Source: Salpingoeca rosetta (Eukaryota > Protista > Choanoflagellata). Taken from it: a stretch of DNA of 64,000 bases. Shown piece after piece: positions 337 to 36,292 of the stretch. The DNA is taken from contig JAWQFM010000005.1 in assembly GCA_033442325.1 (NCBI GenBank), forward strand, positions 728,987 through 792,986, in the 5' to 3' direction. The position numbers were made by a program, and so were the translations under genes. The notes below the pieces were generated by a model. That model was not told the DNA's origin. It searched no databases and saw only the letters and a list, made by a program, of their open reading frames with translations. The stretch's first letter is position 1. Each line of letters starts with the position of its first letter.

Positions 337-1526
337 TTCTCTGTCTCTCTCTGTGTGTCTCTCCCCCCTCCTTATGTGTGTCTCTCTCTTCCCCCTCACC
401 AACATCTTGTCGTTGTGTGCAGTCGATTCGCATCTCGCACCTCCTTGAGAAGTTCCTCCCCAAGTCTGGCGAGCGCGACCAGGAGAAGAACGAGTTTATC
501 GGCGCCATCCAGACCATGTGCCCGCACCTGCTGCGCTACTTTGCCGTCGTTGCCGTCATCACCTGCCCGAAGCGCCCAGACTCGCGCGACGCCATCCGCG
601 ACATTGTGCGCATGATCCGCCACAAGACGGCCAAGTTCTCCGACCCCATCACCCAGCTCCTCGAGTGCATCTACATCGACTTTGACTTTGACAAGGCCCT
701 CGAGCTCCTCAGCGCCTGCGAGAAGGTGCGCCCTGCTTTGTCTGCTGCTGTCGTAGTATGTGTTTGAACGTGGGTGGTTGCGAACGTGGGTGGTTGCGAA
801 CTGTCGTCAAGCGTGCTGGCGCCGTTGTTGGTCGAGCACGCCCATGCTCTTCCTGTTCATTGCACAGCGGTGCGTCTGCATTCAACACACACAGAGGCAG
901 CACGGAGTTTCCTCGTGCCCAGCTTAACACACACACACACACAATACTAATGCCTCTTTCGTTGTGCTGCTTCAGGTGCTTGACTTGGACTTCTTCCTCA
1001 CGACGTACCGCACAGACTTTGTCGAGTCGGCCTCGAAACTCATCTTTGAGGTCTACTGCAAGATCCACAGCAGCATCAGCATCCAGTAAGTCGCAGCAGC
1101 AGCAGCAGCAGTAACAGCAGCCTTGCTCCCTATGCAGCGCGGGCCTGTGGTCTCCCTTGTATGTCAATGTGTGTGTGTGTCTGAAAGTTTGTGTGTGTGT
1201 GTTTTTTTTTTTTAACTTTTATTTTATTTGTGCTTGATACTCACTGTTGCGAAACACGTGCTGTCTTGCCATGCCCGTCTTTCTCCCCGACCCCTTCTTG
1301 TGTGCAGGTTTGTCGCTGAGCGCCTGAGCAAGACAGCGAGCGAGGCGGAAAAGTGGATTGTGGACTTGATTCAGTCGGCCGATCTCAGCGCCCGCATCGA
1401 GCAAGCAGAGGTGCGTGCTCTCGGCCATCACACGGCTGCGGTGCCTCCATATGCACAAACCCGTGTTGTGGGGTGTTGTGGGGGGGGGGGGGTGCTGTTC
1501 GGTGTGTGCATGCGCGAGCGTTCAAC

Positions 1527-1573
<47 letters not shown>

Positions 1574-1995
1574 GGACTTCTGACTTGTTTGTTGACCGTC
1601 TTCTTATGTCTTGGCTTTGATGTGTATGGGTTGCAGGGTTATGTGAAGATGCTTCACGAGCCACAGAGCACATACGACCAAGTTCTCGACTCCACCCGCA
1701 GCATTCCTCTCAGAACGTACGCTTTGCTCGCTCTCTCGTCATGGCATGTTGATTTGAACAACTGCATTCACGCAACGAAGCTACATATTCATCCACAGAC
1801 GCAGACAGACAGTCAGACAGACACGCCCTGCCGTCTTGTCTCAACGTTGCTGTGCAACCCATCATGTCAAATCTCACACGTCAACTGCCGTGCATTGCAT
1901 TGCATTGTGTTCACGCTGTCAGGCGCGCGTTGCTCGACAACTTCCACCGCCGCGGTACACGCAAGCCTCACAACAAGAAGAAGCAGGACAAGTGA
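1..1995 (+). CDS. EIF3E: Eukaryotic translation initiation factor 3 subunit E (INT6), 5'-truncated by window edge; exons ~1-64, 423-725, 976-1085, 1308-1410, 1637-1716, 1923-1995
   Basis: Motifs QQRAWLMHWSLFIFF, AIQTMCPHLLRY, DPITQLLECIYIDFDFDKA, FVESARELIFEVYCKIH-like PCI segment, AEKWIVDLIQSADLSARI; GT-AG junctions in phase; stop TGA at 1993-1995. Confidence 0.93.
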
Positions 1996-2953
1996 ACTGG
2001 ACCGCCTGTTGACGTGTCGCTTGTACACACGTACGCTCTCGACCCGTGTAAGGACAGGGCCCATGTATTTCTCCGTCCCCCAACCAACCCCCCCCCCCCC
2101 TTCCTCCGTTTCCACTGCCCAAAGTGACCTACGACCACTGCCAACCACCACTCTTTTTACCGGACCTCTCCCCCAACAATTGTCGATCCTTGCCCTCCCC
2201 ATCCACCACATGCATATGATTACTCCCTGCAGCTAGTATCGTGCACCCCACCTCTCCCTGTCTCCGATTGATGTGTGTTTACGTGTGTGGCTGCTTTTGC
2301 AGTCCGATGACGACGACGATGATGATGCTGATGATGATGATTGTGTAATTGGTGTTAGGAGGCGTGCCGTGAACTGGTGCATTGGCCCGTGGTTATTGTC
2401 CCTCTCCCCCCTTGTCATCGTTGTGTGTGTGTGCCTCTTCGTTGCCACTCGCGTGTGTTGTGTATGCCAGTGCTTGTGTTTGTGCGTCGTTGGTGGGTCG
2501 TACCCCCAAGTCGTTTATCATGTGTGTTGTGTGTGTGTGTGTGTGCGTGTTTGCGCGTGTGCGTGTTTGCGCGTGCACGCGTATGATTGTGGCTGTGCGA
2601 AGCAGAAGAATAAAGCAGAGTCGAGTTAATGTAACTGAGGCGACGAGCCGCAAGTCAGTTGGCGAGCGGAGACGTGGACAGATGGGATGTGTACACAGAC
2701 AGACACACCGCACAAACAAAGCAAGAAAAGTAGCCAAGCTTGATCACTCGTAGTTGTTTGAGTCAACGCATAGAAGCGTGCGTGGTACAGCCACGCAAAG
2801 CAAGCATGTGGCTGTGGTAAGGGGTTTGAAACAAGTGTTGAATGCAAATAGCGATGGAACAAGCATAGAGGGTTGTTGTTGTGAAGTCCTTGGTATCAAA
2901 CAAAAGAGAAGAAGGAGACTCGAAGCAAGACGAGTTGCCAGCGAGCTGGCTGG

Positions 2954-4718
<1,765 letters not shown>

Positions 4719-26503: not shown

Positions 26504-34318
<7,815 letters not shown>

Positions 34319-34746: not shown

Positions 34747-35407
34747 ATGAGCACGTTTGGGAAGTACTTTCGCGTGACGACCTTTGGCGAGTCGCACTGC
34801 AAAGGCGTTGGCTGCATCGTCGATGGGTGAGTTACGGCCGTGACAGTGAACAAAGGCTTGCTGGTGAATGCGAGCACGAGTGTGCATGTGTGCATGTGTG
34901 TATGTGTGCTGTGAACGCTTTGGTGCACGATCAAATACACACACACGTGTACTGTCACACACATGTTCATTCACATACACATACACACATGTACATGCAC
35001 ATACTCACATACACACTGTACAATCACACACACATGCACACACACACATGCACACACACACATGCACACACTACCACGGGATCAAGGGTGCCGCCGCTGC
35101 TGGAGCTGTCGGAGGAGGACATCCAGCCGCAGCTGACACGCCGCCGTCCAGGACAGAGCAAGCTCACCACCCCACGCAACGAGGCAGACAAGGTCTCAAT
35201 CCTCTCTGGCACGGAGTCTGGCCGAACGCTGGGCACGCCAGTTGCGCTGTTCGTGGCAAACAAGGACCAGAAGCCAGGCGACTACAACTCCACGCGGCAT
35301 GCCCCGCGCCCATCGCACGCCGACTACACGTACACAACCAAGTACGGCGTGCATGCGTCCAGTGGTGGCGGTCGTTCCAGCGCACGCGAGACGGTACGAG
35401 GTGATGC

Positions 35408-35451
<44 letters not shown>

Positions 35452-36245
35452 ATGTGTGTGCGCATGTGTGTGTGTGTGTGCTTCTTGAGTGTAACAATGT
35501 TTGATGTGTTGTACGTTTGTTGATTTGGTATATGCGACCGTAACACATTCCTTCACATTCCACATGCATCCCCGCTGTCCCCTTCACCACCACCACCACC
35601 ATCTTCACGACGTCATGTTCGCTGCAGGGATTTGAGATTGGGACTGGCTTTGAGGGCACAAAGCTGCGTGGGTCTGAGCATAACGACGCGTTTGTGAAGA
35701 AAGGCACGTCGCTGGGCACGGAGACCAACAACAGCGGCGGCATTCAGGGTGGCATCAGCAATGGCGAAAGCATCTATTTCCGCGTCGCATTCAAACCTCC
35801 CGCCACCATTGGGCAGGCGCAGACCTCGGCCAACTTCAGCGGCGAGAAGGACGTGGTGGCGGCAAAGGGGCGACACGACCCGTGCGTTGTGCCGCGCGCC
35901 GTGCCCATTGTGGAGAGCATGGCTGCGCTTGTGCTCGCCGACGCCGCGCTTGCACAGTTGGCTCGACAGGGGGCCACGCCACGCCACGCCGGTGTTGGCA
36001 GCAACGATGTCGACGCGCTGTCTGCCGAGGACCTGCGCGTGCGCTACGACCGCGAGCTGCGGCTGAAGGAGCAGTACCAGAAGCGGCTGCAGAAGCGCGT
36101 TGAGGCCGATGCAAGGGCCATCCCCACCAGGTACCTGTATCCTGGGCTGATTGTCGCTGGCGTGTTGGCGGGCGTCTACCTTGGGCGCCGGCTGTTTGGA
36201 GCGCCGAGCTACGCCTCGTCATCAAGCCTCGTGCTCGGCTACTGA
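34747..36245 (+). CDS. ARO2: Chorismate synthase with C-terminal coiled-coil and TM extension; central ~120 aa absent from the assembly; exons 34747-34826, 35087-35393, 35628-36245
   Basis: [104 protein letters not shown]. Confidence 0.93.
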
Positions 36246-36292
36246 CTTTGTGTGTGTATGTATGTATGTGTGTGTGTTTGTTTGTTTGCTTG

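What the first reader, a model, noticed from the sequence alone, without database searches (positions are those of the whole stretch)
35965..36245. Chorismate synthase with a coiled-coil and tail-anchor transmembrane extension
Seen: after the normal end (..[19 protein letters not shown]) the same exon runs ~90 more codons with coding-like composition: a charged helix ([26 protein letters not shown]), a hydrophobic stretch ([18 protein letters not shown]), RR and a short tail. Established: chorismate synthases are soluble tetramers; a short C-terminal TM flanked by basic residues is typical of tail-anchored outer-mitochondrial or peroxisomal proteins. Inference: chorismate is made on an organelle surface, possibly feeding ubiquinone or folate precursor synthesis.
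Basis: partly seen in the sequence, partly recalled or inferred. Interest (0 to 1): 0.75.

Follow-up and report, generated by a model that had tools for sequence, protein, structure and literature searches.

The report
Membrane-anchored chorismate synthase of choanoflagellates
The chorismate synthase gene of the choanoflagellate Salpingoeca rosetta really does end in an expressed, conserved 92-residue tail (charged helix, one membrane helix, basic end), so this normally soluble enzyme of aromatic amino-acid synthesis is probably tethered to an organelle surface in several close relatives of animals.

Summary
Observation confirmed. The window is Salpingoeca rosetta. The last exon of its only chorismate synthase (CS) gene runs without interruption from the catalytic domain into 92 more codons (35967-36242, stop 36243-36245): a linker, a 35-residue charged helix, an 18-residue Gly-rich hydrophobic helix, RR, and a 17-residue end.

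Stranded RNA-seq covers the whole exon with no splice joint and no variant. The same tail architecture occurs in CS of five other named craspedid choanoflagellates and in several uncultured relatives. It is absent from two acanthoecids, other holozoans, fungi and bacteria. An exhaustive tail-only profile search found it on CS-type proteins only.

The heptad pattern is weak, so I call it a charged stalk, not a proven coiled coil. The target membrane is untested; the features lean to mitochondrial outer membrane or peroxisome, and ER is not excluded. The ubiquinone/folate idea is not supported: the only chorismate user found is an anthranilate (tryptophan) synthase.

Two extras:
- The assembly, and so the annotated 334-aa protein, lacks about 118 core codons that the mRNA contains.
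- Hartaetosiga gracilis keeps the tail on a CS with decayed active-site motifs.

I judge it a new variant of a known kind.

The parts
34747..34826 (+). CS exon 1 (start codon 34747; carries the FGESH motif)
   Evidence: Pfam PF01264 positions 1-19 align to residues 8-26. GTGAGT donor at 34827.
35087..35393 (+). CS exon 2 (carries RPSHADYTY and [10 protein letters not shown])
   Evidence: PF01264 positions 21-121, 134 bits.
35394..35627 (.). (GT)n-rich 'intron' of the assembly; the place where one or more CS exons (about 118 codons, Pfam positions 122-224) are missing
   Evidence: PF01264 positions 122-224 are found nowhere in the genome. RNA reads and contigs carry a 30-nt loose end before 35626 that encodes ..QAMLSIPATK; it is absent from the window and from the whole assembly.
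35628..35966 (+). Exon 3, catalytic-domain part (GFEIG.. to ..LAQLAR, includes GRHDPC)
   Evidence: PF01264 positions 225-327, 134 bits. RNA depth 10-45.
35967..36017 (+). Tail: 17-residue Gly/Pro-containing linker
   Evidence: Translation. The matching stretch has low pLDDT (68-69) in the orthologue model.
36018..36122 (+). Tail: 35-residue highly charged helix with the conserved E-x-R-L-[RK]-E-x-[YF] motif
   Evidence: Alignments. Helix 377-408 in the AF2 model of the orthologue. 45% charged with a weak heptad pattern.
36132..36185 (+). Tail: 18-residue hydrophobic helix (putative transmembrane domain) with GxxxGxxxG
   Evidence: Kyte-Doolittle mean 1.6-1.9. Helix 411-435 in the orthologue model. 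GxxxG is conserved.
36186..36245 (+). Tail: RR plus a 17-residue Ser-rich end (net +2), then the stop codon 36243-36245
   Evidence: RNA depth of 28-42 runs through the stop.

Best explanation
This is the single chorismate synthase gene of Salpingoeca rosetta. Its product is a tail-anchored protein. The catalytic domain starts at the very N-terminus, so there is no signal or transit peptide and it should stay in the cytosol. A flexible linker and a charged helix of about 5 nm act as a stalk. An 18-residue Gly-rich hydrophobic helix, flanked by basic residues, is inserted after translation into an organelle membrane. The CS tetramer would therefore sit on the cytosolic face of that membrane. 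Shown here: the tail is encoded, transcribed in one exon with the domain, conserved across craspedid choanoflagellates, predicted to be helical, and found only on CS-type proteins. Inferred: membrane insertion and topology. My odds for the target membrane are mitochondrial outer membrane and/or peroxisome about 0.5, ER about 0.3, other about 0.2. The purpose is unknown. The only downstream chorismate user detected in this genome is anthranilate synthase, so the chorismate made there most likely feeds tryptophan synthesis. The confidence given is for the tail-anchor reading as such, not for a particular organelle.
For: RNA: continuous stranded coverage of 35626-36250 with no joint.

Conservation: the same linker / charged helix / TMD / basic-end architecture is found in these species:
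- Microstomoeca roanoka (tail 56% identical)
- Choanoeca perplexa
- Monosiga brevicollis
- Salpingoeca urceolata
- Hartaetosiga gracilis
- uncultured relatives, one of them on an intron-bearing 10-kb metagenome contig
.

Of the first 200 retrieved CS, only those with an extension of 68 residues or more have a strongly hydrophobic 17-residue window (Kyte-Doolittle mean 1.68 or more), and that window lies within 2-19 residues of the end. All 13 analysed tails are net +1 to +3 after the TMD.

The CS tree puts the named choanoflagellate sequences except Mylnosiga in one starred clade, SH-aLRT 95.

The AF2 model of the orthologue has helices 377-408 and 411-435 with pLDDT 72-88.

There is no N-terminal extension.

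The exhaustive tail-only profile search over 1.84 billion representatives gave 5 hits: 4 CS-type and 1 marginal coiled-coil repeat protein.

The TMD is Gly-rich with a +2 end, like the organism's own Fis1 tail and unlike its Sec61-beta tail. Published rules: a moderately hydrophobic TMD plus a positive tail favours mitochondria or peroxisomes (PMC5450235).
Against: There is no localisation or membrane-extraction data. The TMD is short and only marginally hydrophobic (GRAVY 1.6-1.9), with a Pro and four Gly, so stable insertion is not certain. The rules used for organelle prediction come from yeast and mammals, and my species-own calibration is one protein per class. A net charge of +2 lies between the published mitochondrial (+2.9) and ER (+0.9) mutants of ACBD5. 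CS tetramers have D2 symmetry (general knowledge), so all four tails reaching one membrane would need the flexible linker. Acanthoecid choanoflagellates do without the TMD.
Confidence: 0.72

Rival explanations
1. The tail anchor targets the endoplasmic reticulum (GET/TRC40 route) rather than mitochondria or peroxisomes, so CS sits on the cytosolic face of the ER.
For: The 16-residue core has GRAVY 1.91, just above the yeast ER threshold of 1.75 quoted in PMC5450235. Some orthologues have more hydrophobic cores of 2.2-2.8. A net tail charge of +2 is not high.
Against: The 18-residue window scores only 1.6, below the organism's own Sec61-beta (2.44). The TMD is Gly-rich and has basic residues on both flanks in nearly all orthologues, which in yeast and mammals disfavours the ER.
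Confidence: 0.27
2. The anchored protein has a second, non-catalytic role at the membrane (scaffold or binding partner), and the tail, not the enzyme activity, is the conserved function in some lineages.
For: Hartaetosiga gracilis P0292 and the unnamed P0294 keep only 97/172 and 35/75 of the columns that are invariant in 8 reference CS. They have lost the [21 protein letters not shown] and GRHDPC motifs. Yet the P0292 tail is 54% identical to S. rosetta, as close as that of the sister species, while the end of the domain is only 51% identical against 76-88% in the others. The helix carries a conserved motif and the TMD a conserved GxxxG.
Against: In S. rosetta all catalytic motifs are intact, so catalysis is probably kept there. 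I could not check whether Hartaetosiga also has a normal CS. One transcriptome and one anonymous contig are thin evidence. No partner is known.
Confidence: 0.2
3. The hydrophobic segment does not span a membrane; it mediates oligomerisation or only peripheral association (for example with lipid droplets).
For: Marginal hydrophobicity, a Pro and four Gly in 18 residues, and a GxxxG helix-packing motif.
Against: A hydrophobic helix at the extreme C-terminus followed by K/R is conserved although its sequence drifts (12-55% identity). That is the pattern of a physicochemical targeting signal. GxxxG is also common in true transmembrane helices (general knowledge).
Confidence: 0.08
4. The tail is an artefact: an unspliced intron, a read-through of the true stop, or a mis-assembly.
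For: The same gene does contain an assembly error 340 bases upstream of the tail. A GT sits at 36131.
Against: There are no joints, indels or variants in four runs from three studies. In-frame GC3 is 0.81. Orthologous tails occur in independent transcriptomes and metagenomes.
Confidence: 0.02

Closest known systems
Canonical chorismate synthase (AroC / fungal Aro2, Pfam PF01264)
   Same: The catalytic domain is the same: 134-bit matches for each of the two large exons and 459 bits for the full-length Microstomoeca orthologue. The His-containing motifs FGESH and RPSHAD, plus [10 protein letters not shown] and GRHDPC, are intact.
   Different: Known CS are soluble (cytosolic, or plastid-targeted through an N-terminal transit peptide in plants; general knowledge) and end within about 0-35 residues of the domain. 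This one adds 92 residues with a C-terminal membrane helix.
Tail-anchored proteins of the mitochondrial outer membrane and peroxisomes (Fis1, Mff, GDAP1, ACBD5; PMC5450235)
   Same: A helical cytosolic stalk, a single moderately hydrophobic Gly/Ala-rich TMD at the extreme C-terminus, and a short basic end. The tail of the organism's own Fis1 looks alike (TMD with 3 Gly, end net +2).
   Different: No sequence relationship was detected (Pfam none, Atlas 0.75, no paralogue in the genome). The cargo is a shikimate-pathway enzyme. The S. rosetta / Microstomoeca end is longer (19 residues).
FALDH (ALDH3A2), a metabolic enzyme with a tail anchor (PMC5450235)
   Same: It is a precedent for a soluble-fold metabolic enzyme tethered by a C-terminal TMD, in which tail charge decides between ER and peroxisome.
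   Different: It is an unrelated enzyme with a more hydrophobic TMD (GRAVY 2.4). Its localisation was shown by experiment; here it is only predicted.
Other eukaryotic CS C-terminal extensions
   Same: The C-terminus of eukaryotic CS is variable. Acanthoecids, ichthyosporeans and others carry 20-58 extra residues.
   Different: Those extensions have no hydrophobic helix and often end in K/R clusters that look like nuclear localisation signals, not membrane anchors.

Membership tests
Chorismate synthase (PF01264) | Profile match above the curated cut-off (27 bits) | tested here: met
   139 and 135 bits in the six-frame genome search; 134 bits for each of exon 2 and exon 3.
Chorismate synthase (PF01264) | Complete domain (profile positions 1-327) | tested here: inconclusive
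   The assembly encodes only positions 1-19, 21-121 and 225-327. The mRNA carries at least the end of the missing part (..QAMLSIPATK), and RNA contigs extend 402-844 nt upstream of exon 3. I could not read the whole missing sequence.
Chorismate synthase (PF01264) | Conserved active-site and flavin/EPSP-binding motifs ([27 protein letters not shown]) | tested here: met
   All four are present in P0001. They fall in columns that are invariant in 8 reference CS.
Chorismate synthase (PF01264) | Conversion of EPSP to chorismate with reduced FMN | not testable with these tools
   Needs an enzyme assay or complementation of an aroC/aro2 mutant.
Tail-anchored membrane proteins | Single hydrophobic helix close to the C-terminus (within about 50 residues) | tested here: met
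   18-residue segment ending 19 residues from the C-terminus. Helix 411-435 of 449 in the orthologue model.
Tail-anchored membrane proteins | No N-terminal signal peptide, transit peptide or other TMD | tested here: met
   Pfam position 1 aligns to residue 8 of the protein. The rest of the orthologue folds as the globular CS domain, mean pLDDT 85.
Tail-anchored membrane proteins | Post-translational insertion with the N-terminal domain in the cytosol | not testable with these tools
   Needs localisation, carbonate extraction and protease protection.
Mitochondrial-outer-membrane / peroxisomal type of tail anchor | Moderately hydrophobic TMD plus a positively charged C-terminal segment | tested here: inconclusive
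   GRAVY 1.6-1.9 and net +2 in S. rosetta; 1.4-2.8 and +1 to +3 in orthologues. These values lie between the published mitochondrial and ER examples.
Coiled coil | Heptad periodicity of hydrophobic a/d positions over four or more heptads | tested here: not met
   The best register fills 5 of 11 a/d positions and 45% of residues are charged. It is helical in the model but reads better as a charged stalk.

The most novel reading that the evidence does not exclude
The membrane-tethered CS of craspedid choanoflagellates has acquired a second, non-enzymatic job at an organelle surface. That job is what keeps the tail under selection, and in Hartaetosiga the protein survives as an anchored pseudoenzyme after its catalytic motifs decayed.
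Probability: 0.2. Interest if true: 0.75.

Novelty: new variant of a known kind. Interest (0 to 1): 0.6.

Why it matters
Shikimate-pathway enzymes outside plastids are treated as soluble cytosolic proteins. [quoted passage not shown] This has not been considered before. It is directly testable because S. rosetta can be cultured and transfected (general knowledge). I found no paper describing it: full-text searches for chorismate synthase together with choanoflagellate, tail-anchored, C-terminal extension or transmembrane gave nothing relevant. The work also flags a wrong reference protein (334 aa, internal hole) and a possible anchored pseudoenzyme in Hartaetosiga.

Tried and rejected
- **Frame errors.** Searches failed on wrong frames or coordinates. 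I corrected them and re-ran.
- **Family of the tail.** Pfam found none. The ESM Atlas look-alike search gave a best score of 0.75, which is uninformative. The tail has no paralogue elsewhere in the S. rosetta genome, only itself. I therefore found no donor for the tail.
- **Tail-only exhaustive profile search.** The only non-CS hit, P0295, is a 978-aa repeat coiled-coil protein at E 5e-4 matching in 10 stretches. I rejected it as compositional.
- **Ubiquinone/folate link.** No chorismate lyase and no PabB-type gene. CM_2 and PDT are also absent and PDH is only sub-threshold. The caveat is that exon-by-exon six-frame searches and an imperfect assembly can miss genes.
- **Anchor on the neighbouring AROM gene.** Its last exon ends without any hydrophobic segment.
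- **P0002 (Tara metagenome fragment).** It has the helix but no TMD. The 1088-bp contig ends 118 bases after its stop, so I cannot tell whether an intron or a true loss explains this.
- **'Pterocystis' and two unnamed sequences with tails.** They nest inside the choanoflagellate CS clade. Contamination versus transfer is left open.
- **Earlier notes of this scan.** Searches for 'tail anchor' gave nothing on this gene.
- **Not done.**
Exons were searched one by one by reference, and the database's own model P0001 was used as returned.
  - I kept read laying to 766 letters beside the (GT)n runs, so exon 1-2 splicing and the 3' UTR were not examined.

Full report
**Identity and gene model**

The window is G000:C5:728987-792986 of a 55.4-Mb genome. 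The best database match to the last exon is 'chorismate synthase [Salpingoeca rosetta]', P0001, 334 aa, 100% identical over 100% of the query.

From the sequence and the Pfam matches, the gene in the assembly has three exons:

| Exon | Coordinates | Pfam PF01264 positions |
|---|---|---|
| 1 | 34747-34826 | 1-19 |
| 2 | 35087-35393 | 21-121 |
| 3 | 35628-36245 | 225-327, then the tail |

It is the only CS locus in the genome. I searched the exons one by one by reference and did not join them myself. The joined model I used is the database's own P0001.

**The observation**

Exon 3 translates without a stop from GFEIG.. through ..LAQLAR at 35966. The Pfam match itself ends five residues earlier, at residue 108 of the exon. 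Exon 3 then continues for 92 codons:
- a 17-residue linker (35967-36017);
- a 35-residue charged helix (36018-36122);
- P-T-R;
- an 18-residue hydrophobic stretch, [18 protein letters not shown] (36132-36185);
- RR and 17 more residues;
- the stop at 36243-36245.

In-frame GC3 is 0.81 in the tail and 0.74 in the domain part of the exon. The introns and the 3' flank have 0.47-0.50 GC.

**RNA evidence**

I laid two stranded raw-read RNA runs of 2026 and two older contig sets on 35485-36250. I chose this stretch to stay beside the (GT)n runs. Coverage starts sharply at 35626 and is continuous to 36250, at depth 6-45. All of it comes from one strand. There is no joint, indel or variant, and both contigs match with 0 differences. 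So the tail is part of the mature mRNA, in the same exon as the domain. The GT at 36131 is not used as a splice donor.

**Conservation**

Homologues that extend far beyond the domain all show the same order of parts: linker, charged helix with an E-x-R-L-[RK]-E-x-[YF] motif, hydrophobic helix with GxxxG, then K/R.

Named species with the tail:
- Microstomoeca roanoka (449 aa; tail 56% identical)
- Choanoeca perplexa
- Monosiga brevicollis
- Salpingoeca urceolata
- Hartaetosiga gracilis

Uncultured relatives include one on a 10.3-kb intron-bearing metagenome contig whose last exon also holds the domain end and the tail together.

The hydrophobic helix is absent from these groups:
- the acanthoecids Acanthoeca spectabilis and Savillea parva;
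- Corallochytrium, Syssomonas, Amoebidium and Sphaeroforma;
- fungi, amoebozoans and all retrieved bacteria.

In a tree of the domain with the tail cut off, the named choanoflagellate sequences except Mylnosiga form one starred clade (SH-aLRT 95). That clade also contains a trio labelled Pterocystis / unnamed, which carry tails. Contamination or transfer could explain the trio. Mylnosiga fluctuans and one anonymous sequence sit on another branch and have a different hydrophobic end without the helix.

**Is the tail borrowed?**

- Pfam finds nothing in it.
- The S. rosetta genome holds no second copy.
- The Atlas look-alike search is uninformative.
- A tail-only profile searched exhaustively against 1.84 billion cluster representatives returned five proteins. 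Four are CS-type and one is a marginal repeat coiled-coil protein that I regard as compositional.

Because that library is clustered at 50% identity, the count of tail-bearing CS is a lower bound.

**What it most likely is**

The protein meets the sequence definition of a tail-anchored protein:
- It has one hydrophobic helix 19 residues from the C-terminus.
- It has no N-terminal extension, since Pfam position 1 aligns to residue 8.
- The rest is a globular domain.

AlphaFold2 on the full-length Microstomoeca orthologue (mean pLDDT 85) gives the CS fold, a low-confidence linker, a helix at 377-408, a two-residue break, a helix at 411-435, and a disordered end.

The heptad pattern of the charged helix is weak: 5 of 11 a/d positions, 45% charged. 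I therefore describe it as a stalk of about 5 nm rather than a coiled coil.

**Which membrane?**

Published rules say that a moderately hydrophobic TMD with a positive tail goes to mitochondria or peroxisomes, and a very hydrophobic TMD with low charge goes to the ER. In the ACBD5 series, +4.9 is peroxisomal, +2.9 mitochondrial and +0.9 ER. The yeast ER threshold is GRAVY 1.75 (PMC5450235).

| S. rosetta protein | 18-residue GRAVY | Gly in window | Net charge after TMD |
|---|---|---|---|
| CS tail | 1.60 (16-residue core 1.91) | 4 | +2 |
| Fis1 tail (inferred last exon) | 2.27 | 3 | +2 |
| Sec61-beta tail | 2.44 | 0 | +1 |

Orthologues range from 1.4 to 2.8 in GRAVY and from +1 to +3 in charge. 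This leans to the mitochondrial outer membrane and/or peroxisomes but does not exclude the ER. With one calibrator per class it is only an indication.

**Metabolic context**

- The neighbouring, divergently transcribed gene is the pentafunctional AROM. Its first coding ORF ends at 34318, 428 bases from the CS start, and it has no hydrophobic C-terminus.
- Across the genome I found one chorismate-binding gene. It scores as anthranilate synthase (428 bits against about 67 for PabB) and is fused to a TrpD part.
- I found no chorismate lyase, no CM_2, no prephenate dehydratase, and only a sub-threshold prephenate dehydrogenase match.

Within the limits of exon-wise searches on an imperfect assembly, the visible fate of chorismate is tryptophan, not ubiquinone or folate.

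**Assembly error**

Pfam positions 122-224 are encoded nowhere in the assembly. Every RNA read or contig that reaches the start of exon 3 continues upstream with a 30-nt sequence that encodes ..QAMLSIPATK. This is identical to the Microstomoeca protein just before GFEIG. That 30-mer is absent from the window and from the whole assembly. RNA contigs extend 402 and 844 nt upstream of exon 3, which fits a full-length CS of about 450 aa. So the (GT)n-rich 'intron' 35394-35627 hides one or more lost exons, and the annotated 334-aa protein lacks about 118 core residues.

**A decayed enzyme that keeps the tail**

Hartaetosiga gracilis P0292 (456 aa, still 234 bits to PF01264) and the anonymous P0294 keep only 97/172 and 35/75 of the columns that are invariant in eight reference CS. 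They have lost [21 protein letters not shown] and GRHDPC. Yet the P0292 tail is 54% identical to that of S. rosetta, as close as the sister species. The end of its domain is only 51% identical, against 76-88% for the other choanoflagellates. This hints at a role for the anchored protein beyond catalysis. I could not check whether Hartaetosiga also has a normal CS.

**Literature**

Richter et al. 2018 (PMC6040629) note that choanoflagellates keep the shikimate pathway that animals lost. Full-text searches found no description of a membrane-anchored CS.

**Verdict**

The tail-anchor reading is well supported by sequence, RNA and phylogenetic conservation. The organelle is still to be determined, and the proposed ubiquinone/folate purpose is not supported. 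This is a new variant of a known enzyme family.

Noticed in passing
window 35394-35627: Assembly hole: one or more CS exons (about 118 codons, Pfam positions 122-224) are present in the mRNA but absent from the whole assembly. The public 334-aa protein model is therefore internally truncated. The gap lies in a (GT)n-rich stretch.
   Followed up: partly
window 33671-34318 (-) and upstream to about 26504: The pentafunctional AROM gene lies head to head with CS, with 428 bases between the two start codons, so they may share a bidirectional promoter. AROM ends without any membrane segment.
   Followed up: partly
P0292 (Hartaetosiga gracilis) and P0294 (anonymous Logan contig): CS homologues with decayed catalytic motifs but a well-conserved S. 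rosetta-type tail. They may be anchored pseudoenzymes.
   Followed up: partly
P0125, P0131, P0177, P0205, P0015, P0204, P0011, P0153 (C-termini): Many non-craspedid eukaryotic CS end in short K/R clusters that look like nuclear localisation signals (for example ..GKAKKAK, ..AAKRAK, ..KKRKIE.., ..TKRARVD..). The CS C-terminus seems to be a hot spot for localisation signals.
   Followed up: no
P0250 (Mylnosiga fluctuans) and P0231: These two sit on a separate CS branch near bacterial sequences. They carry a different Pro-rich extension that ends in a hydrophobic stretch, without the charged helix.
   Followed up: no
P0181 (labelled Pterocystis sp.), P0148, P0157 / L004: Tail-bearing CS from a centrohelid transcriptome and two unnamed sources nest inside the choanoflagellate CS clade (SH-aLRT 92). 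This could be prey or contaminant sequence, or gene transfer.
   Followed up: no
L008 (G000:C16:1101703-1104975), ORF 1249-3267 (-): The only chorismate-binding gene of the genome is an anthranilate synthase (TrpE clade 3 type) that follows a TrpD (anthranilate phosphoribosyltransferase) part in the same open frame, so it looks like a Trp-pathway fusion.
   Followed up: partly
alignment A2, TMD columns: GxxxG (in S. rosetta GxxxGxxxG) is conserved in the hydrophobic helix across most tails, which suggests helix-helix packing within the membrane.
   Followed up: partly
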